Source: Ascidiella aspersa (lineage: Eukaryota). Taken from it: a DNA stretch of 64,000 bases. The translations under genes and the position numbers were made by a program. Positions 3,100-64,000 of this stretch are shown here, one piece after another. The first letter of the stretch is position 1, and every line of letters begins with the position of its first letter. The stretch is taken from NCBI GenBank assembly GCA_963924565.1, contig OZ004614.1, forward strand, positions 18,414,001 to 18,478,000. The letters run 5' to 3'. The notes below the pieces were generated by a model. The model saw only the letters and a list, made by a program, of their open reading frames with translations, searched no databases and was not told where the DNA came from.

Positions 3100-3330
3100 C
3101 CCAGGAGTATCTTCTAAAAAAGCAACTAAATCCAGAAAAAAACATTGTAACTGCTGCCTGAAAGGAGGTATTGAATATGGATCGAAAGCTGCTATGATAT
3201 ATGCTAAAATTTGTAAAAATGAAAAGGTGAACAACCTGTTTACATCTGGTCTCCTCATCCATCCAAACGCTTTCTGGCTAGTAGGCTGCAGCCAAGACAC
3301 GAAAGTTTATGACTTAGATGTGTCTTTTGG
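3100..3330 (+). pseudogene. YqaJ-like (lambda exonuclease family) fragment, transposon-associated
   Basis: GIEYGSKAAMIY...SGLLIHPNAFWLVGCSQDTKVYD resembles the YqaJ motif G(L)xxHPxxxWLGASPDG. Confidence 0.45.
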
Positions 3331-4705: not shown

Positions 4706-4812
4706 AGTAAGTAAGTAATGTTTATTTTTCCGTTAGCGCTTAAATTAAAATGCACTAGTAAGCTATGACAAAAAACAAATTCACGCGCGATACGGCCGGA
4801 GCAGCGGGTCCA
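4706..4812 (-). repeat. Second copy of the LINE 3' tail (AATAAA + TTAC repeats)
   Basis: AAGTAAGTAAGTAATG.TTATTTTTCCGTTAGCGCTTAAA and TACGGCCGGAGCAGCG are shared with 1722-1790. Confidence 0.6.
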
Positions 4813-31427: not shown

Positions 31428-34400
31428 TGTATTGAAGCGGTTGATGCTTTATTGCGAGATGCGTAGATCGAATAAAAAGGGTCAGCGCAACACAACACTC
31501 GATTATAAAGCACAACACAAAAAAGGCAAATTGCACGCTTCGCTAAGCGCGCGCCGACACGGAACCATGTACGCCACAGTACCCCAGAAGCGGGCATATA
31601 AAAAGCCGCGTAGCGTTGCGGGGGATGAACGTTGCTGCGTCTTGGTCGTCCTCTGGCCGGAGGTTGCGCGACTGGAACCGGTTTAGTTAAATCGACGTGA
31701 GCCGGTTTCAAGCGGTCGATGGAAATGGTCTGTTGACGACCAACATCTAAAAGGAAGGTTTTGCTGGACGCTTGAAGGACCTTATATGGGCCGCGTCGTA
31801 CGGTTTGGTCAGAGGAGCGCGATGAGTGTCACGGCGTACAAACACGTATGGGCTTATTCCTCAATGTCGACGGGACGGAAATACGAGGGTTGCTGTGACG
31901 CGACATCGGTTGTGGCAACAGCTGTCGGAGACTGTCCTGTAAAGCAGGTAAAATCCTTCATTAGCAATGAATTGACCCGGAATTGTTAAAGGTGCGCCAT
32001 AAACCAACTCAGCGGATGACGCTTTTAAGTCTTCCTTAGGAGCAGTTCTAATGCCCAGCAACACCCAAGGCAACTCGTCCATCCAGTTTGATCCCGTCAA
32101 GCGTGCCATCAATGCGCTCTTCAAATGACGGTGAAAACGCTCCACCAGGCCGTTCGCTTGAGGATGGAATGCTGTCGTGCGGTGGAGGTGAATAATACCC
32201 AATAGTTGGCCTACGGTAGTCCACAGCTCAGACGTGAACTGCGGGCCTCGATCGAGAGCCCGCGCACAGGTGAGTGTGGTAGCGTCTTCCATTGGTATAG
32301 CTTCCGGCCATCGTGAGAATCTGTCGACAATTGTCAAAACATACCTATGGCCTCGACACGGTGGAAGCGGAAGGAATGGACAAATGACCTGGATAGCGCA
32401 TCAGCAACTGTATTTGACTTACCGCTGATGTGTTGGACATCGGTAGTAAACTGGGAAATATAGGAGAGTTGACGTTGCTGACGAGCAGACCACGGATCTA
32501 AAACTTTCTTGAATGCAAAAGTGAGAGGTTTGTGATCAGTATAGGCTGTGAAGTTGCGACCTTCAAGAAAGTAGCGAAAGTGCCTGATTGCTAGGTGTAG
32601 TGCTAACAACTCGCGATCGAAGGCACTGCTGTACCTGGTTTCGGGTTTTCTCAGTTGACGACTGAAAAACGCCAGGGGGGCCCAGCAGCCTTCTTTAAGT
32701 TGTTGGATGACAGCGCCGACGGCAGACTGCGAAGCATCAACTGTGAGCGCGATGCTGGCTTGCCACTCCGGGTGATGCAAAAGCGTTGCGTTAGCGAGTG
32801 CATTCTTTGCTTTGTCGAAAGCTTCCTGAAGAACGCGAGTCCAAACGAGTGACCTCGGCTTGCCGGATAAGGAACCATACAGGGGCTTCATAATGTCTGC
32901 GACATTTGGAATGAACCTGTGATAGAAGTTTATCATACCGCAAAACTCCTGTAAACCCTTGACGGTTTGAGGCACAGGAAAGTTGTTGATTGCGTCAACT
33001 TTCGAAGGCAGAGGTTTGACCCCGTGCTGGTCAACGAAATGACCGAGGAACTCCAGGCTTTCTTCACCGAACTCGCACTTTTGCAGGTTCAAAACAAGAC
33101 CGTGGTCTGAAAGCTGCTGAAAAAGCTGCGTTAAGGGTTGCATATGAGCAGCCTTAGTTGGACTAGCAACAAGAATGTCATCGAGGTAAACATAAATAAA
33201 GTGCAAACCTTGACAAATCGAGTCCATCATCCTCTGAAAAGTTTGCGCGGCATTCTTCAACCCAAACGGAGTTCGAAGAAACTCGAAGAGACCAAATGGC
33301 GTGATGACAGCGGTCTTTGCGATGTCTGCTTCAGCAACTGGAACCTGATGATAGCCTCGTATTAAGTCTATTTTAGAAAATACGGTACAACCAGCCAGAC
33401 GTGCAGTAAAGTCGTGGATATGGGGTATAGAGTAACGATCAGCTTGAGTGGCATCATTGAGGCGACGATAATCGCCACAGGGGCGCCAACCACCCGAGGG
33501 AGGGCTTCTCTACCATGTGGAGAGGTGACGACCATGGGCTGGATGACCGGCGCACTATATATACCTAACTCGAGCATCTTTTGAAATTCAGCCCTAGCTA
33601 ACGATAACTTTTCAGGCGAAAGGCGTCTGACGCGGGAATGTACAGGTTGGCCAGTGATCACAATATAGTGTTGTACGCCATGTTTAGGCAAAGCATCGGA
33701 AAAAACTAGGGATTTTCAGACTAGGAAACCTATCTAATAATCTTTCAAATGGAGAAAGCAACGAATTAAGTGTGTTAAGTTGAGGCGGTGGACAGCGATA
33801 TACTCTTAACGGGCCGGCTGTCTTCGCTATCACAGCCAGCCGGCCTTGTCGTTTCCCTGAAAAGAACACGGTTGGCTGCATTGACGTGCGTCTGCTCCAA
33901 AGCGTCTATGGAAACATATACCAGTAGTTTTATCGCTGTTATTGCGAAATTGCTTACCGCGTTGCACCTTGCTTACAGCAAACTCGTTGCTGCTACTGCG
34001 AGAAAGCCATAAAATGTCTGGCTGCCTTCAGAGCCAATCGACGAAGATATGTGGTATCCTCGTGAGCCAATACTAACCGGATATCCTCAGGCATGTGCTG
34101 CAAAAACAAATGTTCAAAAAGAAAACAAGAACGGTGGTGTCTCCGAGTAGGGCAAGCATCTCGTCCATTAAAACAAGAGGGTTTCTTGTCGCCCAAAGGA
34201 GGCATGTTTAAAAGCTGCGCTGCTCGTTCTTGCTTTGAAAGCGTAAATGACTGCAGCAAGCGTTTCTTAATTGCGTCGTACTTGCCTTCGGCCGGCGGGC
34301 GCTCCAGCAGGTCAATTAAACGTGCTGCAGTTTCTTGGTCGAGCGCAAAAACTATGTAATAGAACTTAGTTGCTGTGTTGGCCAGAACGTAGGAAGAAGC

Positions 34401-34470
34401 TTGATCGAAACGGCGTGTTCAGCTTCCATCTTCGACTTCAAAAGAACGTTTTAAAGTTGCGGGGTTACCA
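31428..34470 (-). mobile_element. Ty3/Gypsy LTR retrotransposon (CsRn1-like), frameshifted gag-pol; 5' LTR missing
   Basis: gag: TKFYYIVFALD...LGDKKPS and CHCC motif CFHRRFG..ARQCSQPC. RT/RNase H ORF 32334-33260 (YLDDILV, DASQSAVGA, YTDHKPL). Integrase 31861-32337 (GLVERFHR). PBS-like TGGTAACCCCG at 34460-34470. Putative 3' LTR 31428-31578. Confidence 0.93.
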
Positions 34471-35686
34471 GTAAAGCGATTATGTTTGTTTATTCGCGTC
34501 ATTAGGGGAAGCGAATAAAGGAGGAAAAGGACGAGAAAAACGGGCGAGGCGTACATTACACAACACGGAAATAATAAATAAATAAAAAGGAAAAGAAAGG
34601 TAATGTGTAATAACAATGGAAAGCGTTGGACAGGATGGGCGGCGGGGGTTAATATCTATAAATATTCGGAGGAAACGTTGCATTTTACGGGAAGGAAAGC
34701 GAGCAGAAAGTGGGCGGTAGAGAGCCCATGCGAATATTACATAAAGTTGAGGTACAATTGAAGAGGGTGCGAGAAAAGGAGTGGATATTTGAAAACCGTG
34801 CTAGGTCTCAACAGGGTATGCAGTGTGACGAGGTTACTAGGGAAAGGACAAAAAAAGGCGCGACATGGCAATATATTGACCACTAGGAGAGCTAGGAAGC
34901 GTTGTGGTGGAAGACCAATAAGTAGACAAAATTAACGAAGGCTTGCGTGGCGATGCTTACTATAAAACGAGGAGGAGTCATATTGAAACAAGCAAACAAG
35001 GTCTTAAATGGCGTAGGTAAATAAATAAACAAAGAAATAAATGGCGATGGATGCTGAAAAGAATAAAAAGAACAATAAGTAGAGAAAGGGTGTTGGTCAG
35101 CCAATGAGAGCTCAAAGTTTGTAGTGTCTAGGGTTCGGGGAGGGGGGTATGTCCCCTGGTTCTTCTCCCTGGATTGGCTATTAAGGAGAGCTTGTGCTAG
35201 TTCTCTCTCATTGGTGGCAGTATGGGTTTTCGCCTCGGACGAGAGCATTTTAGGGGTAATTCTGAATTTTATTGGGGCGCACAATGGAGCTTGGTCTTTT
35301 GATGATTGTTTTGCCTGTTATTTGGGCCTGTTCCGAAAAGAACTTGGACTATTTTTGGGTTGGATATTTAGATTTTATTTTGCCTATTATTTCACCTATC
35401 CCATTAGGACTGGGTGAAAGTGAGGAGGATTTTTGGTAAGGTGGTGCCGGAAAATTTAGTTGTTCTAGGTATTGGAGGGTTAATTTTTTGGGGGGCAGCT
35501 TTGCCTTGTTGGTTTTGGGTGGTCTAAGTGGGTTTTTTATTTGAAATTTACGGGGTTTTTGTTTCCTTATTGTGCGGTTTAAAGTTTTATTGGGTGGGAG
35601 ATTGGCGAGTTGAAATTGTCGTTTATGTTTTAATTTTATTGGGGGTGGGGTGGCAAAGCTGCCGCAGGACGCAACTCACAACGTAC

Positions 35687-38600
35687 CTATTGGGATAGCA
35701 AATTCCTGAGGTCTTGTATTGTTGACATGAATGTTGTGTCTAGCCTATTATGTTCAACGTTGAGTCGTTGTGTAATTCCTCTTTTTATTGCAGATATAAT
35801 TGCTGAAACTGGCCGAATTTGTTTATGTTCGAACTTGATTTTATTTCTGGTTCTCCAGATGTGGTGCCGGGTGAGTGTATTGATGTATACTAGGTGCTCT
35901 GTGTATATTTCAAGGTGGCTGGGTATGTTGAGTCGTGTAGTAATCTCATCAGTGAGCGTGGTGGCAGTGTTGGTGAGTCGGTTGATTAGCTGTTCAATGT
36001 ATTTCCACACTGGCGCCAGTGTGGAACATGTTGAAAAAATGTGGTGCGTGGTTTCTGGCCTACTTCCGCAGAAGAGGCACAAGGTAGCCGGGTCGAGAGA
36101 TATGGAAGAGAATTTGGTGGATACGGGTAAGAGGTCAAATAAAGTTCTATAATTAAACGTTTTTGCCGCGTTAGAGAGGATTGGGTGGTGGACGTTATTC
36201 CAGAGGGTTGTCGGAGCAATGGGACCATCCCTCTGGCTAACGTCGGGGTTGGGGGAGACTAGGCCTAGATAGAGGGTACGGATTGAGCCATGAACGAGTT
36301 GGTCGAAGGAGAAAGAATATTTTTTAACCAGGTTTAAGGCGTGTTTGTAGAAGGGGTTGGGGATAACGGCGTGGGGGTGTGAGTTTCTTAGTCGTAACTT
36401 AAAAAGGTTTGAAAGTTGGAGTCCAATATTATACTCGATCATGGCCAATCCGGGTGTAGTTGGGGTATCGTTTTCTCTATGGCGGCAATAGAAGAAGATA
36501 GACTGCATAAAGAAAAGATCGCAGTAGACGGGAATGTTTGCTACCTTGTATCCCCCCCTATCGAACGGAAGGGCCAGTTGTTGTATTGGAAGGTGCAATC
36601 TACTGTTCCCAGTTATAAAATTACCGACCGCGTCATCTACCCGTTGCCGCAACGACTCGGGGAGTGGATAAACCGTGGCTGTATAGGATATTAATGGCAG
36701 GAATTTAGCCTTCGTGACGATGGATTTGGCGTTCCACGTCATTGCGAACCGGGCATGGCGTTTTATTGTGTCTGTGAGGGTTTTAAAATGTTCGGCCCAG
36801 TTCGCCGTGACGCTCGGCCCAGACCCGATCACGGTCCCGAGTAAACTCAGGTGCGATCGAGTCCATCCGATGGGGGGGAGGGGGCCCTGAGCGCTTCGGG
36901 TGTAGAGGCCTTTGGTCTTGGAGTAGTTCAGAGTTAAACCCGAAGCGTCTCTGAAACGATCTAATTTTTGGAACGCCAATGTCACGGAGTATGGGTGGCA
37001 AAGGGTCAGGGTTGTGTCATCGGCATAACTGGGACACTTGATGCAGTGTCGACCAGGTATGCCGATGCCGCTGACCGACGAGTCGGCCTGAAGGGCCAGT
37101 GAGAAGGGCGTTGCGGCAATCAGGAAGAGGAACAAGCTAAGGGGATCGCCTTGTCTTATTCCCCTTCCAATTGCAAATGGCGCAGTCGGGAACCCGTTAA
37201 CAAGAACAGTAGATTGTGCGTCTGTGTTTATGCTGCGTATTACTCTGATAAAGTGTTCAGGAAAACCCATTTTAGTCATAACACAATAAAGCCATGCGTG
37301 GTCGACCGAGTCGAAGGCCTTCTTGAAGTCTAGGGAGATAAAGTAAGCATCCGTACCCCTCCCCAGCGCGTCATAGTAGAGATCCCTAAGGAGGGTGGTG
37401 GCATCCGATATACGCCGTTTTGGCGCTGCGAATTGGTGGGGGTGGAGGACTCGCTCCAGGATCGCTTTTATCCGAGTGGCCAGGATTTTGGTGTAAATTT
37501 TTAGGTCGGTGTTGAGCAGGGAGATAGGGCGATAGTTTCCTAGGTCCGAGGGATCTTGTTTTTTGTGTAAAAGGGTGAGTGTGCCGAGTTTCATGTCCTC
37601 GGGGATTTGGCCTTGTTCGTGGATTCGGTTCATGACGTCAGTCAGATCCCGACCAATCAGCTCCCAGTACAGAGAATAAAACTCTGTGCTGATGCCGTCC
37701 GGACCGGGGGACTTTCCCGACGCCATTTGCCGAATTGCGTTATGTACTTCCTGGCCCGTGATTGGTCGGGTCAGGGTGTCGTCTAAGGGGTCTAAGCTAG
37801 TAGGGACGTGCGCTAGAAAACTCCGCTGCGCCTCGGCGTCTGTGGGTTGAGTGCGGTACAAGTCCGTGTAAAAGCTGTGGGCGATGTTAAGCATCTCTAC
37901 GTTGTTACTGGTTTTGTTTTGGCTTGTGCCTTGTTTAAGCTCGAGTATGGTTGTGTTCCTACGCTGTTCGGCAAACCGAGCAAAGAAAGCCTTTGTGCCC
38001 CGGTCTCCCCAGTCAAAACCTTGGGCTTGGGATTTTAGAAGTCTGGCGCGGGCAGATTGCCGCTGAAGGGTGCAAAGTTGACGTTTAAGGGTTAGGTAGG
38101 GGGTAAGTAGGGTTGGGTTGTTTGCCAGCGGCCCCCAGAGTGCCGTGACGCCTTCCTGCAGTTGCACATGGTGTTTGTTTCGCTCTACGGCTAGCAATTT
38201 GGAGTGCTTTATGTTAAGGTCTTTTATGCGTTGTTTTATGTGCAGCCACCAGGAGGTTTTATCGTCGAAAAGGGCGGGGTGGAGCGTGCTCCACATTTCC
38301 CACCGCTTTTCGAGTTCCTCCAGGAAAGCTGCGTTGGCGTAGGTGCTAGTATTGTTTTTCCAGTACCCCTTACCCCTGCGGGATCCGGGGACTGTCTCGA
38401 TTTGTAAGGTTACCATGTCGTGGTCCGACTGGCAATTAGGCGGCGTCCCATTTTCCGAAATTGGTTTTATGAGTGCGCTGATATAGAAACGATCTAAGCG
38501 GGACTGTGTGTTGTTAAGTCTACGTGTATAGAATGGCCTATCGCCGTACAACTGCCGAAAGGAGTCTGACAACTGGAGATCGCGGCAAACGTCAATGAGA

Positions 38601-39071
38601 CCTGCCAGGAGCTCGGGATAAGTAGAGGGGGGGGTAAACGATCAAGGCGCGAGTTCTCCACCCCGTTAAAATCGCCCGCCAAAATGGTTGGGTGCCTCGA
38701 ATGCACGTGCACGTACAGCGACCCGAAGAAAGCTCTGCGAGCAGCACTTCCTTCGGTTCGCTGCGGGGCATACACGTTTACGACGTGTATTGTTGAGCCG
38801 AAAAGCTGTATATCGACTGCCAGGACCCGCCCGTCTCCGTCGCCACTACGCGCGCCGAAGCTGAGTGATGGATGCCTAAGCAATATCGCGACCCCGTTCC
38901 TCGCGAGAGGCCTCGACAAGGCCGACCAAAACAGGGCTTTATTGGGTTGCCATTCAACACCCCACGCCATTTCCTCCGCAGGAGAACTGTGCGTCTCCTG
39001 ATGGCCGATCGTTTGGCCGCATCTTTCATTCCCCCGACGTTGAATGTGGTTACTTTAAGGTAAGTAGCCAT
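35687..39071 (-). CDS. Family A ORF2: APE endonuclease, reverse transcriptase and C-terminal zinc knuckle (frameshifts in the endonuclease region)
   Basis: MATYLKVTTFNVGG, ILAGDFN, SRLDRFY, SDHD, GKSPGPDG, YRPISLLNTD, SLDFKKAFDSVDH, GIRQGDPLS, YADD, CLFC..ETTHHIFSTC. ORFs 38778-39071, 38494-38970 and 35687-38572. Confidence 0.95.
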
Positions 39072-39128
39072 GACTACTATTTAGTTTAGGTTAAGCTATC
39101 TATCCTAGGTACATCCTAAGTTGCGTCC

Positions 39129-40499
39129 TTATGCCATGCTTTGCGAAAGCGGCGTGGCCTTCTTCTCGCATTGGGGGCAGACGCTTATGTCTCCCGTGTT
39201 TGAAAAAAAATGGCAGCTGCCGACGCAGCTTTGTAGCCACTGGGGGCAGCCGGTACACTTAATGGCTTTGCCCGCTAGAGGGACTTGGACGGCCACGCCG
39301 CAATCGCAGGTTTCGGTTAGAGTTTCTAGGCGCTGTGCCTTATGGTTAGTTGTACTCTCGTCCGAGCCTGAATAAAACCGCTTAACTGCATCATTTATGT
39401 TGTCGTCGTCCTGATGCTGTTCCCCTCCTGTTGTGTCCGTTTCCGATGTGAATGTGGTTGTAGTTTCGCTTGAGCTGGATTCCGTGGTGCCCGATGTGCC
39501 CGCGTTCACCGCTAAGGCGTCGTTTTCAGTGGTGCCCGCGTTCACCGCTAAGGCGCTGTTTTCTGTTTTGCCCGCGTTCACCGCTAGGGCGCTGTTGCTT
39601 GCTGTGCCCGCGTTCACTGCTAAGGCGTTGTTGTCATTGGACCCCTGTTCACCAGGTGCCGCTTTTTCTTTCCCGCCTTCCTCGCTCTCGCTCGGTGGTT
39701 GGTCGGTTGGCGGGGGGGAGGTTCTCTCAGGCACCTGTTGATGGGAAGGCGGCGGAGGAGGAGGAAGAGGGGGAGTAGGAGGAGGAGGAGGGATGTTGGG
39801 GAGAGGAAGGCCTGGCTTGGGCCATTGTTTCCCGTTGCGTCTGTTGACGGTGGTGTAGCCATCCATGTTGGATGGCCCTGGTTTGGGGGTTGACGTGTGA
39901 TCCGGCGTTGTCAGCTCCTGAGATTTCAGGACCTGGCAGTCGTCCTTGTAGTGGCCGAACTTTCGGCATATAAAGCATTGGGGGGGTTGGCCCGTGTACT
40001 TTGTCGGGAAGGCCAGCCCCTCGACCCGGATCGTTTGCGGGATGGGGCTTCTTTTGAGGTCCGCAGTTCTCATTGTATAAGTGGTGCGGCCGTCGTTTAA
40101 ATGGTTGCGGTCCTTCTGCCGCTTGTAAACTTTGACTTCTCCATGCCGGAAATTCAGTAGGGAGACTATTTCCTGGATCGGAAATCTTGGCGGGACGTGT
40201 GAGACTTCGACCGTAGTAAACTCGCTTTCATACCGCTTGACGGACTGGACCGCTGATTGGCCGGTTAGGCGTATGACCAGGTCATCGGCGGTTTTTTCGT
40301 CGACGCAGGTGAAGTCAGTGAAGCCTCCTCTGCGTTCGACGATGCCTTCCAGGCGGTTGTAGTTGAAGTGCGCCTTCTTCAGCAGTTCGTATATGAAGTT
40401 GCGGGATCTTTTGTCCGGCAGCTTTGCCACTACTTCTGTTTTTCTTTCGAAGATTGTTCGGCTTCTGGCGACAACTTTGTTCCAGGCTGGCTGGGACAT
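39129..40499 (-). CDS. Family A ORF1 (RRM-like region, CCHC knuckle, low-complexity linker, Cys-rich C-terminus)
   Basis: Intact 456 aa ORF upstream of ORF2; CFICRKFGHYKDDC; C-terminal CDC..CTGC..CVGSC..CPQC. Confidence 0.9.
   Translation of the reverse strand: MSQPAWNKVVARSRTIFERKTEVVAKLPDKRSRNFIYELLKKAHFNYNRLEGIVERRGGFTDFTCVDEKTADDLVIRLTGQSAVQSVKRYESEFTTVEVSHVPPRFPIQEIVSLLNFRHGEVKVYKRQKDRNHLNDGRTTYTMRTADLKRSPIPQTIRVEGLAFPTKYTGQPPQCFICRKFGHYKDDCQVLKSQELTTPDHTSTPKPGPSNMDGYTTVNRRNGKQWPKPGLPLPNIPPPPPTPPLPPPPPPSHQQVPERTSPPPTDQPPSESEEGGKEKAAPGEQGSNDNNALAVNAGTASNSALAVNAGKTENSALAVNAGTTENDALAVNAGTSGTTESSSSETTTTFTSETDTTGGEQHQDDDNINDAVKRFYSGSDESTTNHKAQRLETLTETCDCGVAVQVPLAGKAIKCTGCPQWLQSCVGSCHFFSNTGDISVCPQCEKKATPLSQSMA
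39497..39632. repeat. 36-bp coding tandem repeat x4 (ALAVNAG)
   Basis: TGCCCGCGTTCAC(C/T)GCTA(A/G)GGCG with period 36. Confidence 0.95.
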
Positions 40500-40964
40500 T
40501 GCGGGCTGGGTTGAGAAGGTGTGCAGTGGGGTGACTGCAGGTTAAAGGGGAGGATATTTGGTGGCGTCTTATTGGACGGTTGTCCTCAACGCTTAGGTCG
40601 GGTAGTTCTAGCGGACCTTAAAAAAGGCCAGGAAAAGGGTTTTTTCCTTTTGCGCTTGGTAGGATCTGAGGTTGGGGTTTTTTGGGTTGGCCCACTTACC
40701 GTTCCGGCGGCAAAACTCTTGAAAAACCGAGTAATGCGTTTTTTTCCGGCAACGGGGTGGGACGGGTTGCTGGTACTAAGCCTGTTCAGGGAAATCCCTA
40801 CGCTCCAAACCTTCGGGGCTAGGCTGGAGCTTATTCTCTTTTCTTCCTGAATCAGGTAAGTCTGGCAGGATATTGCGCAGATCTTGCTGTTGTGGACGGT
40901 TTGTCGGGTCCTTTCGGAGCTCTGATCTGAAAGACTGACTGCTGACAGCTCTTCGGATATTGTG

Positions 40965-41160
40965 AAGGATAGAGTTCTTCACTTTGTAATAACTACGCCT
41001 CGCCTATCGAAAAACCGCCCGACGGTTGAAAAGCGCGCGCAGTAACACCCAATCGTTTTTTTTCGCGCACTCTCGCACTGCTCCATTGGCGAAAGCGTCG
41101 AACCGTCATTTGCATCTCTTCCGATCTATAAGCGACGAGAGTGGAAAAACACGCCACACT
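40965..41160. promoter_or_regulatory. Orphan H2A/H2B-type divergent histone promoter
   Basis: CCAAT 41049-41053, E2F-type TTTCGCGC 41061-41068, ATTGG 41085-41089, octamer ATTTGCAT 41108-41115 and TATAAG 41127-41132. Octamer followed by TATA is the classic H2B arrangement. It lies between head-to-head elements A1 and B1. Confidence 0.75.
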
Positions 41161-42582
41161 CTTCGTCGTCGAAAGCTACGAAGAACCGATTTCACTCGAG
41201 AAACAAGATACTCGAACATACAAGTGTATGACCCAAATATGTTGTCCAAGCCATGGAGCATGGTTGTTTCCCAGGGGAATCCCCACACCGCCGCAGGGAA
41301 TCCTTCCCTCGTCGCAGCGCCCCACAGGAGGGAGGTCTTCTCCCGTCGTACGGAGGTCGTTGCTAAAATTCCTAGCAAGAGGTCAAGGAACTTCATCTAC
41401 AGCCTCCTAAAACTGGTGTCTTTCGACACCAACAATCTGGAGGGGATAGTCGAACGAAAAGGAGGCTACACCGACTTTACGTGTAAAACTGAACAGCAAG
41501 CCGAAGAGTTGGTCTTCAAGCTGAAGAGCAGACCCGAGGTCGATCTCGCAAGGCGCTATGAGAGCGAATATACCAGCGTGGAAATCTCGCACGTGCCACC
41601 TCGCTTCAACATCGGTACGCTTATGGCGTACATCCAGAAGAACCACGGCACTGCCCTAGAGGCCAGAAAGCTAAAGGACGCCATAGCCGGTCTCCCAGAC
41701 GGGAGAATAAAAGCAGAGGTGCTCACCGAGCACCTGAAACAAAATCCCATCCCGGCAACCATCCGATGCGAAGGACTCACGTTTCCAGTGAGATACTACC
41801 AGCAACCACAGCAGTGCTTTCACTGCAGAGCCTTCGGCCACATCCGGGCAAATTGCCCGACACGCCAGCCCCCATCGCAGCGCACAGCAGACGAGGAACC
41901 CGACCCAGCGACAAACTCAGAGAAGACCCCGGAGAACATGCCAACAGACATCTCGTCGGAGAACGGTGAGAAGACGGAGAAAGAAAGAAGGACAGAGGCG
42001 GCAACATCATCCAGCATAACGGCGGCCACAGCAGTAACAGCAACAGCAGCATCCGGCAACTCAGCGGCAAACGATATCCAACAGCCAGAAGACGACTGAA
42101 CCACCAAACGACAAAGAAGCAGCGGCAACACCCCTCCCGAGAACGACCAAAAGCGTCCAAAAGCAGAAGATGACAGGCTATGCCTGCCGCAGTCCGAGGG
42201 GCCTTCTGTGGACGGGCCAGTGCGTAAATGCCGTGAATGCCTCGAGTGCGACTGCCAAGCTCTCGTGGATTTTCCAGAGCCGGGCATACCGACTGTATGC
42301 GACGCCTGCAAGAGGATCTTCCGCTGGTGCGATGAATGCAATTATGCATACGTGTGGCTTCCCAAAAGCCAGAAGTCTTGCCCCACTTGCGGGACTTTCA
42401 TACCGGAAAGCCTCTCACAAACCCTCCCGGGTTGACAGAGGCGGTCTGGAGCAGGAAATTACATAATCATTGTTTGATTTCAAAGTTTTTATTTGCATAT
42501 TTGTTTTTCGCCTCGCCCGTTTTATTTTCGTTCTTTTTTCTTATTCGTTTTCTTTAATTGATGCGAATAAACCAACATACTC
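41161..42582 (+). mobile_element. Family B ORF1-only non-autonomous Tx1 derivative (copy B1)
   Basis: ORF1 is homologous to family A ORF1 and is followed within ~150 bp by a 3' end (CGCCTCGCCCGTTTT...TTATTCG...GCGAATAAA) homologous to that of family A. No ORF2. Confidence 0.85.
41239..42435 (+). pseudogene. Family B ORF1 with one nonsense codon (42097-42099)
   Basis: MLSKPW...CFHCRAFGHIRANC. The TGA corresponds to TGC in copy B3, and the frame continues into Cys-rich ORF 42208-42435. Confidence 0.85.
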
Positions 42583-42872
42583 AGAAACAAGACACTCGAA
42601 CATACAAGACCCAAATATGATGTCCAAGCCATGGAACATGGCCGTTTCCCAGGGGAATCCCCACACCGCCGCAGGGAATCCTTCCCTCGTCGCAGCGCCC
42701 CGCAGGAGGGAGGAGGTCTTCTCCCGTCGTACGGAGGTCGTTGCTAAACTTCCTAGCAAGAGATCAAGGAACTACATCTACAGCCTCCTAAAACTGGTGT
42801 CTTTCGACACCAACAACCTGGAGGGGATAGTCGAAAGAAAAGGAGGCTACACGGACTTTGCTGAAGAGAGCT
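42583..42872 (+). mobile_element. Tandem second family B copy (B2), 5' part only
   Basis: Near-identical to 41199-41480; deletion junction into family C ORF2. Confidence 0.9.
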
Positions 42873-45800: not shown

Positions 45801-46161
45801 ATTTTGTTTTTCATCCGCCATTTTGTTTTTTTTTAATTTTTCAATTCATTTACATAGAGCCTGCTTTGGGCTTCTATTCCACCCCCACCTAAATGTTAGG
45901 CTTTAACAAACCCCGATACGCACATCCTGGGAAAGGGGAGCATCATAGCTTTCCTCTCAAAACGAAAGACCTGCCGCATGCATACTCCTCCTTGTAGGGG
46001 GAGTGAAGGGCAGGTCCCGTCTAACTTCCATACTGGTGTATATTTCACCACCTTCACTCGCCTTTTCTTTTCCGTTATACAATAAATTCAAATAAAGCAA
46101 ACTACACGGGGCAATGATGAGCCCAAACAAACCAAAGGGGGGGTTAGCACATTGCATTGCT
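42876..46161 (+). mobile_element. Family C Tx1 element: degenerate ORF2 and 3' UTR
   Basis: ILAGDFN, SRLDRFY, GKTPGPDG, YRPISLLNTD, GVRQGDPLS and YADD across several frames; conserved 3' modules at 45920-46155. Confidence 0.92.
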
Positions 46162-46174
46162 AAGGCTGTCAATG

Positions 46175-51499: not shown

Positions 51500-51512
51500 A
51501 AGGCTGTCAATG

Positions 51513-55507
<3,995 letters not shown>

Positions 55508-55617
55508 TAGCGAGTTTTTGGGTCGTCGCTCGAAGGTTTGTTATTTGCCAAGTAAAATCCTGCTCACTAACGAACTAGGGGGGTACATTTCAAGGTAGAG
55601 GTAGGTACCAAATGGTT

Positions 55618-55652
55618 CTCTTTCAAACTGTAGGGTGGCTCTGAAAAGAGCC
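55618..55652 (-). terminator. Histone mRNA 3' stem-loop and downstream purine-rich element (HDE)
   Basis: Minus strand AAAC-GGCTCTTTTCAGAGCC-ACCC (stem-loop 55637-55652), followed by AAAGAG. Confidence 0.97.
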
Positions 55653-55679
55653 GTTTTTTGGTGTGAAGCAGTTGTTGCT

Positions 55680-56057
55680 TTAAACTTTCTTTGAGGTCTT
55701 CTTGGGAAGAAGCACGGCCTGGATATTGGGCAGCACACCTCCCTGAGCGATGGTTACACCGCCGAGCAGCTTGTTGAGCTCCTTGTCGTTGCGAATGGCC
55801 AACTGCAAGTGACGGGGGATGATTCTGGTCTTCTTGTTGTCACGGGCTGCGTTGCCAGCCAACTCGAGCACTTCGGCGCTCAGGTACTCGAGCACGGCTG
55901 CCAGGTACACGGGGGCACCGGCACCAACACGCTCCGAGTAGTTGCCGTTGCGCATCAGTCTGTGCACACGACCGACTGGGAACTGCAGGCCAGCTCTCGA
56001 GGAACGGCTCTTCGGCTTTGGCTTTGCTTTACCACCACCTTTACCACGTCCAGACAT
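55680..56057 (-). CDS. H2A: Histone H2A, replication-dependent (intact ORF, promoter displaced, possibly pseudogenising)
   Basis: 125 aa, MSGRGKG...[12 protein letters not shown]...[20 protein letters not shown]; intronless; stem-loop downstream. Confidence 0.97.
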
Positions 56058-56062
56058 TTTTT

Positions 56063-59000
56063 GCGATTATGTTTGTTTATTCGCGTCATTAGGGGAGGCG
56101 AATAAAGGAGGAAAAGGACGAAAAACGGGCGAGGCGTACATTACACAACACGAGAATAAAAAAAAAGAAAAAGAAAGGTAATGGATAATAACAATGGAAG
56201 CGTTGGACAAAATGGGCGGCGGGGGTTAATATGTATGTATATTCGGAGAAAACGTTGCATTTTACGGAAAGGAAGGCGAGCAGAAAGTGGGCGGTAGAGA
56301 GCCCAAGCGAATGTTCCATAAAGTTGAGGTACAATTAAAGAGGGCGCGAGAAAAGGAATGGATATTTGAAAACAGTGCTAGGTCTCAACAAGGTATGCAG
56401 TGTGACGAGGTTACGGGGGAAAGGACAAGAAAAAGCTGCCGAAGGACGCAACTCACAACGTACCTATTAGGATAGCAAATTCCTGAGGTCTTGTATTGTT
56501 GACATGAATGTTGTGTCTAGCCTATTATGTTCAACGTTGAGTCGTTGTGTAATTCCTCTTTTTATTGCAGATATAATTGCTGGAACTGGCCGAATTTGTT
56601 TATGTTCGAACTTGATTTTATTTCTGGTTCTCCAGATGTGGTGCCGGGTGAGTGTATTGATGATGTATACTAGGTGCTCTGTGTATATTTCAATGGTGGC
56701 TGGGTATGTTGAGTCGTGTAGTAATCTCATCGGTAAGCGTGGTGGCAGTGTTGGTGAGTCGGTTGATTAGCTGTTCAATGTATTTCCACACTGGCGCCAG
56801 TGTGGAACATGTTGAAAAAATGTGGTGCGTGGTTTCTGGCCTACTTCCGCAGAAGAGGCACAAGGTAGCCGGGTCGAGAGATATGGAAGAGAATTTGGTG
56901 GATACGGGTAAGAGGTCAAATAAAGTTTATAAATTAAAATCTATAATTAAAGTTTTTGTCGCGTTAGAGAGGATTGGGTGGTGGGCGATATTCCAGAGGG
57001 TTGTCGGAGCAATGGGACCATCCCTCTGGCTAACGTCGGGGTTGGGGGAGACTAGGCCTAGATAGAGGGTACGGATTGAGCCATGAACGAGTTGGTCGAA
57101 GGAGAAAGAATATTTGTTAACCAAGTTTAAGGCGTGTTTGTAGAAGGGGCTGGGGGTAACGGCGTGGGGGGTGTGAGTTTCTTAGTCGTAACTTAAAAAG
57201 GTTTGAAAGTTGGAGTCCAATATTATACTCGATCATGGCCAATCCGGGTGTAGTTGGGGTATCGTTTTCTCTATGGCGGCAATAGAAGAAGATAGACTGC
57301 ATAAAGAAAAGATCGCAGTAGACGGGAATGTTTGCTACCTTGTATCCCCCCCTGTCGAACGGAAGGGCCAGTTGTTGTATTGGAAGGTGCAATCTACTGT
57401 TCCCAGTTATGAAGTTACCGACCGCGTCATCTACCCGTTGCCGCAACGACTCGGGGAGTGGATAAACCGTGGCTGTATAGGATATTAATGGCATGTTCGG
57501 CCCAGTTCGCCGTGACGCTCGGCCCAGACCCGATCACGGTCCCGAGTAAACTCAGGTGCGATCGAGTCCATCCGATGGGGGGGAGGGGGCCCTGAGCGCT
57601 TCGGGTGTAGAGGCCTTTGGTCTTGGAGTAATTCAGAGTTAAACCCGAAGCGTCTCTAAAACGATCGAATTTTTGGAACGCCAATGTCACGGAGTATGGG
57701 TGGCAAAGGGTCAGGGTTGTGTCATCGGCATAACTGGGACACTTGATGCAGTGTCGACCAGGTATGCCGATGCCGCTGACCGACGAGTCGGCCTGAAGGG
57801 CCAGTGAGAAAGGCGTTGCGGCAATCAGGAAGAGGAACAAGCTAAGGATCACCTTGTCTTATTCCCCTTCCAATTGCAAATGGCGCAGTCGGGAACCCGT
57901 TAACGAGAACAGTAGATTGTGCGTCTGTGTTTATGCTGCGTATTAATCTGATAAAGTGTTCAGGAAAACCCATTTTAGTCATAACACAATAAAGCCATGC
58001 GTGGTCAACCGAGTCGAAGGCCTTCTTGAAGTCTAGGGAGATAAAGGAAGCATCCGTACCCCTCCCCAGCGCGTCATAGTAGAGATCCCTAAGGAGGGTG
58101 GTGGCATCCGATATACGCCGTTTTGGCGCTGCGAATTGGTGGGGATGGAGGAATCGCTCTAGGATCGCTTTTATCCTTTGGTGTAAATTTTTAGGTCGGT
58201 GTTGAGCAGGGAGATAGGGCGATAGTTTCCTAGGTCCGAGGGATCTTGTTTTTTGTGTAAAAGGGTGAGTGTGCCGAGTTTCATGTCCTCGGGGATTTGG
58301 CCTTGTTCGTGGATTCGGTTCATGACGTCAGTCAGATCCCGACCAATCAGCTCCCAGTACAGAGAATAAAAAACTCTGTGCTGATGCCGTCCGGGCCGGG
58401 GGACTTTCCCGACGCCATTTGCCGAATTGCGTTATGTACTTCCTGGCCCGTGATTGGTCGGGTCAGGGTGTCTGTCGTCTAAGGGGTCTAAGCTAGTAGG
58501 GACGTGCGCTAGAAAACTCCGCTGCGCCCCGGCGTTTGTGGGTTGAGTGCGGTACAAGTCCGTGTAAAAGCTGTGGGCGATGTTAAGCATCTCTACGTTG
58601 TTACTGGTTTTGTTTTGGCTTGTGCCTTGTTTAAGCTCGAGTATGGTTGTGTTCTTACGCTGTTCGGCAAACCGAGCAAAGAATGCCTTTGTGCCCCGGT
58701 CTCCCCAGTCAAAACCTTGGGCTTGGGATTTTAGAAGTTTGGCGCGGGCAGATTGCCGCTGAAGGGTGCAAAGTTGACGTTTAAGGGTTATGTAGGGGGT
58801 AAGTAGGGGGTTGGGTTGTTTGCCAGCGACCCCCAGAGTGCCGTGACGCCTTCCTGCAGTTGTACTTGGCGTTTGTTTCGCTCTACGGCTAGCAATTTGG
58901 AGTGCTTTATGTTAAGGTCTTTTATGCGTTGTTTTATATGCAGCCACCAGGAGGTTTTATCATCGAAAAGGGCGGGGTGGAGCGTGCTCCACATTTCCCA

Positions 59001-59247
59001 CCGCTTTTCGAGTTCCTCCCGGAAAGCTGCGTTGGCGTAGGTGCTAGTATTGTTTTTCCAGTACCCCTTACCCCTGCGGGATCCGGGGACTGTCTCGATT
59101 TGTAAGGTTACCATATCGTGGTCCGACTGGCAATTGGGCGTCGCATTTTCCGAAATTGGTTTTATGAGTGCCGTGATATAGAAACGATCTAAGCGGGACT
59201 GTGTGTTGTTAAGTCTACGTGTATAGAATGGCCTATCGCCGTACAAC
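56063..59247 (-). mobile_element. Family A copy A2 (3' two-thirds, frameshifted), 3' end abutting the H2A start codon
   Basis: Near-identical to 34476-34850 plus 35656-38553; ends GCGAATAAACAAACATAATCGC-AAAAA-ATGTCTGGACGT. Confidence 0.95.
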
Positions 59248-60387
59248 TCGACACCAACAACCTGGAGGGGATAGTCGAAAGAAAAGGAGGCTACACGGAC
59301 TTTACGTGCAAAACTGAACAGCAAGCTGAAGAGCAGACCCGAAGTCGATCTCGCAAGGCGCTATGAGAGCGAATACACCAGCGTGGAAATCTTGCACGTG
59401 CCACCTCGCTTCAACATCGGTACGCTTATGGCGTACATCCAGAAGAACCACGGCACTGCTCTAGAGGCCAGAAAGCTAAAGGACGCCATAGCCGGTCTCC
59501 CAGACGGGAGAATAAAAGCAGAGGTGCTCACCGAGCACCTGAAACGAAATCCCATCCCGGCAACCATCCGATGCGAAGGACTCACATTTCCAGTGAGGTA
59601 CTTACAACCACAGCAGTGCTTCCACTGCAGAGCCTTCGGCCACATCCGGGCAAATTGCCCGACACGCCAGCCCCCATCGCAGCGCACATCAGACGAGGAA
59701 CCCGACCCAACGGCAAACCTCGTAAACATGGCAGCGGACACCTCGTCAAAAGGCAAAGAGGAGACGCAACAAGTGAAAAAACCAGAAGTGGCAACATCGC
59801 CAAACGCAACAGCAACAACAATCTCCGGCAACTCAGCGGCAACCGACATCCAACAGCCAGAAGACGACTGCACCACCAAACGACAAAGAAGCAGCGGCAA
59901 CACCCCTCCCGAGAACGACCAAAAGCGACCAAAGGCCGGAGATGACAGGCTATACCTGCCACCGTACGAAAAGCCTTCTATCCACAACGAAGGGTGCGAT
60001 TACCTCATCTGCACCTGCACCGGTATGGTGGAATATCCAGAGGTGGTCGCACCGACCGTATGCGGTGAATGTTTGAAGCTCTACCGCATGTGCAATGGAT
60101 GCAATGAAAAGCACACGAGTGGTACCTCGAGAGCCAGAAGCTTTTCCCCAAGTGCAAGACCCCCATAATAGGCTTCCTCTCGCAAACCCTTCCGGGTTAA
60201 CAGGGGTGTGGCCTAGAGTGGGAATCCCGCAGAAAGTCAAATGCGCTATTTTTTGCCTAATTTGCATAATTTCGTTAATTTCAATTATTTTTTTATATTC
60301 ACATTTGTTTTCGTTTCGCCCGTTTTATTTCGTTCTTTTTCTCCCTTATTCGTTTTCTTTAATTGATGCGAATAAACCAACATACTC
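59248..60387 (+). mobile_element. Family B copy B3 (ORF1-only, 5' deleted)
   Basis: ORF 59383-60168 is homologous to B1; same 3' end GCGAATAAACCAACATACTC; no ORF2. Confidence 0.9.
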
Positions 60388-60417: not shown

Positions 60418-63400
60418 TAATAGCTTTGTTGTACGTGAAGGAGTAGAAGCCGCAAGGCTCAGCAACTGGCTGACCTTGTTTCTAGTGTTGTTACAGCAAA
60501 CCTGTCTTACTGCTGCCATTTAGCTTTGAGGCATCGCTGAATACAAAGAGTAGCAGTTGCTTGGATTTATTTTCATCGCTCAGCACAACGGCTTGGATTT
60601 CATCGTTTCCGTTATATGGAAACATATCGCTTCATAAGGTAACAATTGTTTGTATATTTTTCATTCGCTGGGACCCCCCGTTCGAAGCTGGATAACAAGA
60701 ACCTGTAAAGACTTCGATATGAAGCGCTTAAACGTGGACCGAACAGGCAAGGTAACCATCCAGTTTGCCCCGCCCCAATCGAGACCACAGATTTACGAGC
60801 TCATGGAGCATCTCGGCTTTAACTACAAGCGCCACCTTGAAAGCTTCATACAAAAGCCGAACGGGAAAAACTATTTTGTGCTGCCACGACCAGCAGCAAG
60901 CTGTCGAATTAGCTGCCAAGCTAAATACATCGAACGTAGTTAAACGGGCCGTCCCCTACGAGGACTCAATTATCAAGGCAAGGTTTGTTACATACCAAAT
61001 CGTATTAGACCTGATACTGTCAGGGACTTTTTCTCTGCCTGCTGCCCCGTGCAGACTCGCCATTGACGCACCTGATTCAAGGCGCATTAATGCCGGGAAA
61101 CTCATCTTAGACTTAGACCGCCAGTCTGTAGAGCTAAAGGCAATACCCAAGGAAATAAAAATGGGCCATACCATTATCGGGGTCCATTACGATGGCCAAC
61201 CTGAATCATGCAGGTACTGCAAACAATCTGGCCACGTCTTAGAGACATGCCCCAAATTATTAAAGAAAAACCGCGATAACGAAGAACGAAAATTGTTAGA
61301 AACCAAAAGAGCAGAAGAGGAACGACAACTTGCGCAAAATAGGCAACAAATTGTCCTTGGGGAACCTCGGTCACATTCTTCCCGCAGAGACCAGCACCCC
61401 GGGAGGAAGACGAGTACCCAGGAGCGGAAGTCAACGCGCATCAACCCGCCTCCACTGGAGAGCTCTGCTGAAACAACAACTACTTCCAGCTCTGATGATC
61501 TGAGCACTGGCTCATCAACAGAGGAGGAGGAGCAACAGGAGGAACAGGAGAAGGAGGAGCAGCGGAAGGAGAAGGAGCAAGATAAGGAGGAGCAGGAGCA
61601 GCAGGATGAACACCACCATAACACACCGGACCCGGACTCGGAACGGGGCAAAGGTACTCAACCTGTTGGCGGCACCAAGAGACCCTTAGAGATCTCGCCG
61701 TCCGACACTAGTGGCACATCCAGAAAAATCCCCTACACCGACTTGGTGTGTCAGGCCTGCCATGGCAGCAGTACCAATTGGCCGCAACCTTTTATGCTCA
61801 GAATGTGGGGACGATTCCTTCGCACCCCTCAACTATAGTTGCCCCCCAGTTTTGATAACCCCCTCTTTTAAAAAAAAATGTCAAAATTTTAAAACCCCTT
61901 ATCAATAAACAAAATGGCGTCACATTTAAAAATCGCAACTTTTATTGTAAACGGTTTAACCAATGTAACTAAACGTAATGCTGTCTTCAACTATTTAAAA
62001 ACTTTAAGCGTCAACATTTTAGTTTTGCAGGAGACCCACTCGACACCCCAGGTTGAGTCAACCTGGGCTGCCGAGTGGGCTCCGGGTGTAGGTTGTTGTT
62101 TCAATTCTTGTCCCTCCGGAGGGTCTTCCTCCGGGGGTGTCGCCATTTTATTTCCTGCGTCCCCACTTACCCCTTTAGACATTTTCTCAGATCTCACCGG
62201 CAAAATTATATCCTGTAATATTAATACTCTAACCCATACCATACATTTAACCAATATATATGCCCCGTCCGGTAAAATCAATTACTTAGCCAACAACAAA
62301 TTTTTCGACAACCTTTACCCTTACGTAATCGCTCACCTCCATAAAGAAATAGCTAAAAAACTTAACGTAGAAAAATCCCGGAAAATAGCCCAGAAACATT
62401 CGGACCTTGCCAAATTACGGGAACAAATGAGTCCCCTTAACTACCCCCAAACCTTACTTTCCAAAAATTAAAACGTGAACTCAACCAATACTACCTGGAA
62501 AAATCGAAACAAGACCTTCTAAAGGCAAAGGTTGATAATATGGAAAATAAAAATATATCTAATAAAGCCCTTTACACCCGAGTATTGCCACAAAGGAAAA
62601 AACCCATATTAAAGAATTACTGGACGAATTTCACCTCCCACATACCACCCCCTCAGAACTCTGCCACCTAGCGGAAACTTTTACCAAAACTTGTACGACT
62701 CCCCCCCGATCCCCCAGACCCAATACGACCCCTTCATCCACAATCACACCCCAATTCCCGACCAACTTCACCACTCACTCACCCAACCATTCACCCAACA
62801 CGAAATTAGAAACATCATTAAGACCTTCCCCACCGGTAAAACCCCCGGGCCCGACGGTCTCAGCATCGAGTTTTACACGGAATGCTGGGACCTCATCGTG
62901 CCCTATCTCACCCTTGCCCTCAATCATGCTTACCTTGCCCCAATCCTCCCCGCCGATTTCACCCACGGAGCCATAAACCCTTATCCCCAAAACCCCCGCT
63001 GCCAACACCCTTGCCAACTATTGCCCCATTTCTCTTCTAAACACAGATCTCAAAATCCTAAACAAAATTTTACCGTATTAAACCGCATTTAAAACACTTT
63101 CTATCACCCTTACAACACGCACAACCCGGGAAAAATACATCAACTGCATCAACCCTCATCCGTGACCTCTACCACCATGCCACCCAGAACATCCCCCCTT
63201 CCTATTTTATATCCCTTGATTTTAAAAAAGCCTTCGATTCAATCACCCACCCCTGGCTCACCCACATCCTCACCACCCGCAACTTCCCCCCACCCTTCAT
63301 AAATTACATCCAAACCACCCAAACTTCAGCTACCTCCAAAATTTTAATAAATGGCTTCCCCACTAACCCGTGGCGATCAGAAGAGGTGTGAGGCAAGGCG

Positions 63401-64000
63401 ACCCGCTGAGTCTCACCCTTTTCCTGATCGCCCTCGACCCCTTCCTCTAAAACAGCCAGGACAACCCCTCCATTTCTCCCTCTCCCGCCCCTACCCGCAC
63501 CCCACCCAAACTCGTCGCATACGCGGACGATGTTAGCCCCCACTCCCTCCCCCCGCTATTCGACACCTTGGCCAAATTTACAACCGTATCCGGCTTGACC
63601 CTCAACCCCCTCAAAACGAAGGCTACCTATACCAAATCCCTCCCCATCCCCTCCATGATATACCTCAAATCGATTGGAACCCCCTATCCATATCCCCCTT
63701 AAATATACCCATAGGAGACCCCACAAACTTTAAAAACAAGATCTCACAAATTACACATCCGTTTCTAACCTTTGACTCCAAATCCATTCTCTCTAAGACC
63801 ATCCTTCTCCCCAATTTTACTCAACTGGCATCCGTTAACCCAGCCCCAAACCTTAAAAAAAAAAAAATAAAAAATCCCATTCCCCTCGACACCCTGGCGG
63901 CCAGTCGCCCCCATCCCCCTCTACCTCGACCTCTTCCTTACCCGCATAATAGGCCCCTACCTCAACCAACGCACCCTTGATTCCCCCGCTGATACCCAAA
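60418..64000 (+). mobile_element. Family C/D-type Tx1 element (5' UTR, frameshifted ORF1, degenerate ORF2), running off the window
   Basis: ORF1 ~60650-61838 (KDFDMKRLNV.., CRYCKQSGHVLETC); ORF2 from 61914 (MASHLKIATFIVNG, LQETH, GKTPGPDG, YADD). Preceded by AAGGCTGTTAA. Confidence 0.92.

What the first reader, a model, noticed from the sequence alone, without database searches (positions are those of the whole stretch)
56040..56140. Family A inserts immediately upstream of the H2A start codon, without a poly(A) tail
The minus strand reads ...TTTATTCGC-loop-GCGAATAAA-CAAACATAATCGC-AAAAA-ATG TCT GGA CGT. Copy A1 has the same end up to CATAATCGC (34476) before being cut by the Gypsy remnant. 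The H2A ORF and its stem-loop are left intact. Inference: the element is transcribed from the H2A promoter and could read through to use the histone stem-loop as its 3' end.
Basis: partly seen in the sequence, partly recalled or inferred. Interest (0 to 1): 0.85.

Follow-up and report, generated by a model that had tools for sequence, protein, structure and literature searches.

The report
LINE living in histone H2A leader
An L1-like jumping gene sits in the 5' leader of a histone H2A gene of this (probably ascidian) genome, a few bases before the start codon, and its family is transcribed from the H2A promoter, much as R2 elements live in ribosomal RNA genes.

Summary
On the minus strand a 9-bp hairpin (56076-56106) is followed by the tail AAACAAACATA, then ATCGC-AAAAA-ATG of an intact H2A ORF with its stem-loop.

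- **No poly(A) tail.** The A5 run is native. Six uninserted H2A genes read ...CTCGAG-AAACAAATACAATCGC-AAAAA-ATG.
- **What the element is.** Family A is an L1-like LINE (APE + RT + zf-RVT, plus a CCHC ORF1).
- **A full-length copy.** The copy at C8:18.301-18.308 Mb keeps the H2A TATA box and cap site directly upstream.
- **Promoter hijack.** Four dispersed copies of A and its sister family B begin within about a base of the H2A (three copies) or H2B (one copy) cap site. Their RNAs therefore started at histone promoters.
- **Target choice.** Duplicated target sites of stray copies start with A-N-CGC, or with CCCTCAA for the H2B-resident form. These mimic the home site.
- **This window's copy.** It is 5'-truncated at 59248 and has no promoter. 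Its H2A carries A13P and E92K.
- **Caveat.** Recurrent insertion of family A itself into H2A is not proven.

The scan had already reported this histone-resident LINE clade on other DNA of this genome (s1-790814, s1-801715). I found no publication describing it.

The parts
55611..55657 (-). Histone 3' UTR stem-loop of the H2A gene
   Evidence: Rfam RF00032, 39.1 bits against a gathering score of 34. Identical to the native copies, including the purine-rich downstream element.
55680..56057 (-). H2A coding sequence (125 aa plus stop), open but with A13P and E92K
   Evidence: two replacement changes and no silent change against the six cluster copies.
56058..56067 (-). Native H2A leader remnant ATCGC-AAAAA between the element tail and the ATG
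   Evidence: The same 10 nt precede the ATG in the uninserted H2A genes L003-L008.
56068..56078 (-). Element tail AAACAAACATA, a near-repeat of the native leader AAACAAATACA
   Evidence: The tail is carried by dispersed A copies and, as AAAC(A/C)AACATA, by sister family B.
56076..56106 (-). 3'-terminal hairpin (9-bp stem) with AATAAA at 56076-56081 in its 3' arm
   Evidence: fold. The same TTATTCG-loop-CGAATAAA is found at the 3' ends of family B and of 33-48% identical relatives in metagenome contigs.
56068..59248 (-). Family A copy A2: 5'-truncated, equals nt ~2590-6540 of the full-length copy, with internal deletions and broken ORF2
59248..60387 (+). Sister family B (ORF1-only) copy, truncated at its nt ~235 where it meets A2. 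Its tail ends at 60387 directly against a short H2B start fragment (from 60388).
34481..40994 (-). Family A copy A1, nearly full length: ORF1 39129-40499, APE part 38494-38970, ORF2 35687-38572. It lacks the first 87 nt.
   Evidence: 96.8% identical to the full-length copy.
41001..41187 (.). Remnant of the H2A/H2B divergent promoter plus the H2B leader. The H2A TATA box and leader are missing.
   Evidence: (95% identical to native unit 2003-2191).
31864..34480 (-). Gypsy-like LTR-retrotransposon remnant, starting at its LTR/primer-binding-site boundary, against the 3' end of A1
   Evidence: RT, RNase H and integrase domains in that order. (same boundary hit on C2).
55258..55463 (+). H3 gene fragment of the same decayed histone unit
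   Evidence: 99.5% identical to native unit 717-922.

Best explanation
Family A is an L1-like LINE with ORF1 (CCHC knuckle) and ORF2 (APE endonuclease, reverse transcriptase, zf-RVT). Its home site is the 5' leader of the replication-dependent H2A gene, 9-21 nt before the ATG. It appears to have no promoter of its own. Pol II starts at the H2A cap site, and the RNA carries the first 34 nt of the H2A leader, then the element, and ends in a conserved hairpin plus the 11-nt tail AAACAAACATA. Reverse transcription starts just 3' of that tail, so copies have no poly(A) tail. The template seems to run at least a few bases on into the leader (AUCGC), and nicked DNA that can pair with those bases is used as primer. 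That would explain both precise homing into H2A leaders and why stray insertions sit at A-N-CGC sites. The inserted H2A gene is cut off from its promoter by 6.5 kb and is probably silent. The copy in this finding is a dead remnant: 5'-truncated, without promoter, and its H2A has begun to decay. Shown: anatomy, junctions, cap-site 5' ends and target duplications. Inferred: promoter use, priming by pairing and silencing of the H2A gene.
For: Native leader against junctions. The full-length copy is 6549 nt from the H2A cap site to the H2A ATG, with uninterrupted ORF1 and ORF2 (1140 aa) and the TATA box 30 nt before CATTC. Domains and the L1 ORF2p match (E 3e-52). Dispersed copies starting at the cap site: C4:22436979 (A), C1:26602722 and C2:873257. 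A C7 copy starts in the H2B leader. True retrotransposition is shown by duplications of 12-15 bp. These duplications begin AACGC and ACCGC (home site ATCGC) or CCCTCAA (home H2B site CCGTCAA). The leader 22-mer gives 17 genome hits against 0 for the control. The tail 15-mer gives 27 hits against 6 for the control, and 13 of the 27 lie in the 0.19-Mb histone region. Family B makes head-to-tail arrays with varied 5' ends at one H2B site. The hairpin is conserved in relatives from other organisms.
Against: For family A itself only two copies abut an H2A ATG. A third, A1, has an H2A-promoter 5' flank but a Gypsy 3' flank. A1 and A2 are 98-99% alike and share the A-promoter-B arrangement, so they may be one insertion duplicated with its surroundings. 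Three or four A copies are off target, about as many as on target. There is no RNA evidence. The on-target copies have no fresh target duplication, so the exact nick site (9 or 21 nt before the ATG) and the origin of the tail/leader near-repeat are unresolved. The closest relatives in metagenome contigs show no histone flanks.
Confidence: 0.7

Rival explanations
1. A single chance insertion. An ordinary dispersed LINE landed once in an H2A leader and that copy became a master, so daughters carry the leader. The H2A-adjacent copies were multiplied by segmental duplication and unequal crossing-over in the histone array, not by targeted insertion.
For: A1 and A2 are 98-99% identical and share flanking architecture. 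Only 2-3 A copies are on target against 3-4 off target. Histone arrays homogenise: the H2A next to the full-length copy is identical to the cluster genes.
Against: Off-target duplications mimic the home-site bases. Sister family B shows many different 5' ends and tandem arrays at a single H2B site. A divergent A-like subfamily (72-94% identity) has the same 5' junction at C8:18.6447 Mb. Thirteen of 27 tails lie in 0.06% of the genome.
Confidence: 0.2
2. The element RNA reads on through H2A and is matured at the histone stem-loop as a non-polyadenylated RNA. The reverse transcriptase finds the hairpin internally and starts there.
For: Copies lack poly(A) tails. The pattern of target duplications implies that the RNA extends past the tail. 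The stem-loop lies about 430 nt downstream in the same orientation and is intact. Eight other sense-strand AATAAA hexamers are read through in full-length copies, so the terminal one need not act.
Against: None of the 15 H2A matches in the genome is a retro-copy carrying element plus H2A. An AATAAA sits 11-16 nt before the ends of the copies. One copy, at C8:18722231, ends CGC plus 12 A. There are no RNA data.
Confidence: 0.3
3. The native H2A leader took its AAACAAATACAATCGC from the element, either from an old very short 5'-truncated copy or a recombination scar that was then homogenised through the array. The similarity would then not be a target duplication.
For: Relatives in other organisms already have tails of the form CAAAAATCGAAC after the same hairpin. 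This suggests that AATCG is older than the H2A association.
Against: The 5' junction keeps the native version of the repeat, as a duplication would. The alignment between those short tails is loose. This reading still needs an insertion at the same spot.
Confidence: 0.15

Closest known systems
R2 and R1 elements of rDNA (site-specific LINEs co-transcribed with their target)
   Same: They live in a tandemly repeated, highly transcribed gene family. They depend on the host gene's promoter, make precise 3' junctions without a poly(A) tail, inactivate the inserted units and are often 5'-truncated. Co-transcription is thought to aid targeting (as summarised in PMC4494074).
   Different: R2 has a restriction-like endonuclease, a single ORF, Pol I transcription and a self-cleaving ribozyme. 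Here there is an APE endonuclease, two ORFs and a Pol II protein-gene promoter, and Rfam finds no ribozyme. The target is an mRNA leader, not an rRNA.
Tx1-clade target-specific LINEs (Keno in U2 snRNA genes, Kibi/Koshi in microsatellites, Tx1 in a DNA transposon)
   Same: APE-type, L1-related, two ORFs, with sequence-specific targets in multicopy genes. Family-to-family target switching occurs, as between A (H2A) and B (H2B). Target list from PMC4494074.
   Different: No histone target is listed there or in any paper I could find. Clade membership was not tested by phylogeny.
Spliced-leader gene LINEs (NeSL-1, CRE/SLACS/CZAR)
   Same: They insert near the 5' end of a short, tandemly repeated Pol II transcription unit.
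   Different: They use restriction-like endonucleases and belong to different clades. This comparison rests on my own knowledge and was not tested here.
5' transduction by promoter capture (for example the SVA subfamily driven by the MAST2 promoter, cited in PMC4494074)
   Same: Daughter copies begin with host-gene first-exon sequence because the master is transcribed from the host promoter.
   Different: There it is a one-off capture. Here the captured leader belongs to the element's own home site and is retained even after the switch to H2B.
Human L1 ORF2p
   Same: Best solved-structure match over residues 3-881 (E 3e-52). Same APE-RT order.
   Different: Copies here have no poly(A) tail, the 3' hairpin is conserved, and target choice is sequence-directed.

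Membership tests
Target-specific non-LTR retrotransposon | One kind of sequence flanks more than 20% of copies (working criterion in PMC4494074) | tested here: met
   Thirteen of 27 tail matches lie in the histone region. For family A proper, 3 of 6 tailed copies are tied to an H2A unit.
Target-specific non-LTR retrotransposon | Independent insertions at the same nucleotide of the target (different 5' truncations, tandem arrays) | tested here: inconclusive
   Met for sister family B at the H2B leader. For family A the on-target copies could descend from one event.
Target-specific non-LTR retrotransposon | Stray insertions at sites that resemble the home site | tested here: met
   Duplications start AACGC and ACCGC against home ATCGC, and CCCTCAA against home CCGTCAA. 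Only three duplication-verified cases.
L1/Tx1 group of LINEs | APE endonuclease, then RT, then a C-terminal zinc-binding domain, with a separate ORF1 | tested here: met
   Pfam Exo_endo_phos, RVT_1 and zf-RVT. ORF1 of 456 aa with a CCHC motif seen in its translation (Pfam gave no hit for this ORF, and zf-CCHC matched only the related + strand ORFs). L1 ORF2p is the best solved-structure match.
L1/Tx1 group of LINEs | Placement inside the Tx1 or L1 clade in an RT phylogeny with reference elements | not tested
   No reference RT set (Repbase) was available. The nearest named protein is a Phallusia mammillata pol-like protein, 63% identical.
Promoter-less LINE co-transcribed with its host gene (R2-like lifestyle) | Full-length copies begin at the host gene's transcription start | tested here: met
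   CATTC/ATTC 5' ends lie 30 nt after the H2A TATA box in three dispersed copies, and the in-place full-length copy has an intact promoter.
Promoter-less LINE co-transcribed with its host gene (R2-like lifestyle) | Chimeric host-element RNA observed | not testable with these tools
Histone-type (stem-loop) 3' end for the element RNA | Stem-loop downstream in the same unit, and RNA or retro-copies that end there | tested here: inconclusive
   The stem-loop is present. No retro-copy includes H2A. An AATAAA precedes the copy ends, but eight others are read through.

The most novel reading that the evidence does not exclude
A guild of related LINEs has made the histone genes its exclusive niche. 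Each family homes to the start of one histone gene, uses that gene's S-phase promoter in place of its own, and the H2A-resident family matures its RNA through the histone stem-loop pathway instead of polyadenylation. This would be the first LINE known to ride a replication-dependent histone transcription unit from cap site to stem-loop.
Probability: 0.25. Interest if true: 0.85.

Novelty: new variant of a known kind. Interest (0 to 1): 0.7.

Why it matters
Site-specific LINEs are known from rRNA, snRNA, tRNA, spliced-leader genes, telomeres and microsatellites. A lineage that lives in the leaders of protein-coding histone genes and borrows their Pol II promoters would add a new kind of safe haven. 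It would tie retrotransposon expression to S phase and the histone locus body. It would also give a compact natural example of sequence-guided insertion by an APE-type LINE, with home and stray sites sharing 5-7 bases, which is relevant to how target specificity evolves and can be redirected (H2A to H2B). For genome annotation it explains why this region is a graveyard of half histone units.

Tried and rejected
- **AAAAA as a poly(A) stump.** Rejected: native leaders have the same five A.
- **TCGC after the tail as proof that A1 once abutted H2A.** Rejected: the same A-N-CGC begins verified target duplications elsewhere. A1's flank matches a Gypsy LTR/primer-binding-site boundary that was also hit on C2.
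- **Hairpin significance from folding energy alone.** Not significant (z -1.6).
- **The terminal AATAAA as a clear poly(A) signal.** Weakened: there are nine sense-strand AATAAA in the element against about 2.5 expected.
- **Ribozyme or other known RNA in the full-length copy.** Nothing but the histone stem-loop.
- **Cross-species test.**
  - The first metagenome scan with the single protein found nothing.
  - The profile scan found 80 loci.
  - The closest relatives (42-48% identity) showed no histone flanks or known RNA genes.
  - One more distant contig (L123) has an H3 gene just downstream.
  - A weak MSGRGKGGK match in L119 was not convincing.
- **Literature.** Six searches found no LINE that targets histone genes.

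Full report
**Observation.**
- Arm TTTATTCGC lies at 56098-56106, followed by a 13-nt loop and arm GCGAATAAA at 56076-56084.
- Then come CAAACATAATCGC, five A, and the ATG of a 125-codon H2A ORF (55680-56057).
- The 22-mer spanning the 3' arm and tail occurs twice in the window (56063-56084 and 34476-34497, minus strand). No shuffle gave a match.
- Rfam places a histone 3' stem-loop at 55611-55657.
  - The H2A protein differs from the native one by A13P and E92K, with no silent change.
  - The hairpin is not unusual by energy alone.

**Native context.** The window is C8:18414001-18478000 of a 308-Mb eukaryotic genome.
- The nearest named relative of the element's ORF2 is from the ascidian Phallusia mammillata, at 63% identity.
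- About 170 kb away is a tandem array of 4713-bp histone units ordered H3, H2A (opposite strand), H2B, H1, H4.
- Six uninserted H2A genes share one leader: a TATA box, then 30 nt later CATTC (an initiator-like site), then a 55-nt leader ending ...CTCGAG-AAACAAATACAATCGC-AAAAA-ATG.
- The five A before the ATG are therefore native, not a poly(A) stump.

**The element.** A full-length copy lies in front of another H2A gene at C8:18301135-18307680 (L065).
- From the H2A cap site to the H2A ATG there are 6549 nt.
- The H2A promoter and TATA box are intact. The first 34 nt of the leader come next, then the element body, which begins GTGTACAG.
- It has an uninterrupted ORF1 (456 aa) and ORF2 (1140 aa), followed by a roughly 1.1-kb 3' UTR, the hairpin, the tail and ATCGC-AAAAA-ATG.
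- ORF2 has Exo_endo_phos, RVT_1 and zf-RVT domains. Its best solved-structure match is human L1 ORF2p (E 3e-52).
- The H2A coding sequence behind this copy is identical to the cluster genes.
- The leader sequence AAACAAATACA(A) stands at the 5' junction in native form and at the 3' junction as AAACAAACATA(A). This is an 11-12-nt near-repeat that looks like an old target duplication now carried inside the element.

**The window's copies.**
- Copy A2, the one in the finding, spans 56068-59248.
  - It corresponds to nt ~2590-6540 of the full-length copy, has internal deletions, and its ORF2 is broken.
  - At 59248 it meets, head-on, a truncated copy of sister family B. This unit therefore has no H2A promoter.
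- Copy A1 (34481-40994) is nearly full length and 96.8% identical to L065.
  - It lacks the first 87 nt. It is joined to the H2A/H2B promoter remnant (41001-41187) without the TATA box or leader.
- A1 and A2 are 98-99% alike, so they may be duplicates of one event.

**Promoter use.** A 22-mer of the H2A leader occurs 17 times in the genome, against 0 for the reversed control. Apart from native genes, the matches are element heads.
- Three dispersed copies begin at the predicted cap site:
  - C4:22436979 (family A, 4267 nt) starts CATTCTTTCG.
  - C1:26602722 starts the same way.
  - C2:873257 (family B body) starts ATTCTTTCG.
- A family B copy on C7 starts in the H2B leader. Another on C3 carries the H2B leader followed by part of the H2A leader.
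- LINE copies begin where their RNA began, so these RNAs started at histone promoters.
It agrees with earlier scan reports s1-790814 and s1-801715, which I reached independently and then checked.

**Target choice.** Three stray copies have clean target duplications.
- AACGCCTCCAGG flanks a 217-nt family A copy that is 99.5% identical to L065.
- ACCGCTTCACTGGTG flanks the C2 copy.
- CCCTCAATTCTA flanks the C7 copy.
- The first two start like the H2A home flank ATCGC. The third starts like the H2B home flank CCGTCAA.
- Another short family A copy is followed by ATCGC, and A1 is followed by ATCGCTTTACTGG.
- A1's flank is the same LTR/primer-binding-site boundary of a Gypsy-like family that the C2 copy hit.
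- I read this as priming by pairing. The template RNA runs a few bases beyond the tail into the leader of its master's home site, and nicked DNA complementary to those bases is preferred. An endonuclease preference for the same bases would look the same.
- Either way, target choice is sequence-directed and the H2A leader is the best site.
- Genome-wide, 13 of 27 matches to the tail 15-mer lie in the 0.19-Mb histone region, against 6 for the control.
- Family B shows varied 5' ends and head-to-tail arrays at one H2B-leader site.
- For family A itself, recurrent insertion into H2A is not proven.

**3' end.**
- The hairpin TTATTCG-loop-CGAATAAA, followed by a 10-12-nt tail, is also found at the ends of family B. 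It is found too in relatives at 33-48% protein identity in metagenome contigs from other organisms, whose flanks differ.
- It is therefore an old, conserved terminal signal, most likely the reverse transcriptase's recognition site.
- It embeds an AATAAA, but the full-length element has eight other sense-strand AATAAA.
- Copies have no poly(A) tail, and none of the 15 H2A matches is a retro-copy of element plus H2A.

**Comparison and novelty.**
- The lifestyle is that of R2/R1 in rDNA, and of Tx1-clade elements in snRNA genes, as listed in PMC4494074.
- The enzyme set is L1-like.
- The target, a histone mRNA leader with capture of a Pol II promoter, appears in none of the papers I could search.
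- One metagenome contig (L123) has a more distant relative with an H3 gene immediately downstream. This hints that the habit is not confined to this genome.
- I class the finding as a new variant of a known kind.

**Limits.** There are no RNA reads and no contig look-ups. Clade placement was not tested by phylogeny.

Noticed in passing
window 34461-34486 and G000 C2:871840-871865: Two different LINE families (A here, B-type on C2) end at the same nucleotide of a Gypsy-like family, at the LTR/primer-binding-site boundary. The C2 copy has a perfect 15-bp duplication. This looks like a secondary hot spot resembling the H2A site (A-N-CGC). How A1 comes to have an H2A-promoter 5' flank and a Gypsy 3' flank is unexplained.
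   Followed up: partly
L123:3660-4427 (metagenome contig Ga0210059_1046236): A LINE with ORF2 33% identical to family A is followed, about 490 nt after its stop codon and on the same strand, by an H3 gene (residues 10-102, 95% identical, with several replacements). Possible histone association in another organism.
   Followed up: partly
L070:1400-1470, L073:7190-7250, L074:10760-10830, L076:190-260, L103:10460-10520: Relatives from other organisms end in the same hairpin TTATTCG-(4-5 nt)-CGAATAAA plus a 10-12-nt tail. In L070, L076 and L077 the tail is followed by ATGACGACAG and then another element, suggesting tandem arrays there too.
   Followed up: partly
L065 (G000 C8:18300500-18308000): A full-length family A copy with uninterrupted ORF1 and ORF2 lies behind an intact H2A promoter at the edge of the main histone array. 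A 217-nt copy on C4 is 99.5% identical to it, so the family was active recently.
   Followed up: yes
window 42563-42620; L034:3764-3800; L035:6950-6990: Family B tails are followed directly by 5'-truncated heads of further elements. These are head-to-tail arrays of the kind made by repeated insertion at one site.
   Followed up: partly
window 43000-55000 and 60800-64000 (+ strand): At least four more decayed LINE copies, 33-50% identical to family A in ORF2 or ORF1, fill the space between histone fragments (H4 piece at 46174-46219, H3 piece at 55258-55463). The whole window is a histone-unit graveyard.
   Followed up: partly
G000 C8:18722231-18722380 (L021/L022): A family A copy whose end reads GCGAAT-CGC followed by 12 A, lacking the usual tail. 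It is the only copy with an A-run, possibly a polyadenylated template. Its 5' side runs into an assembly gap, which I left untouched.
   Followed up: no
G000 C8:18644594-18644729 (L060/L061): A third compacted H2A/H2B promoter is invaded on both sides: a divergent A-like element (72-94% identity, mosaic) with the same 5' junction, and a B-like element in the H2B leader.
   Followed up: partly
L036:2400-2640 (just beyond the window end): An uninserted but decayed H2A pseudogene with a diverged leader sits next to an H2B leader invaded by family B. The two sites are therefore invaded independently.
   Followed up: partly
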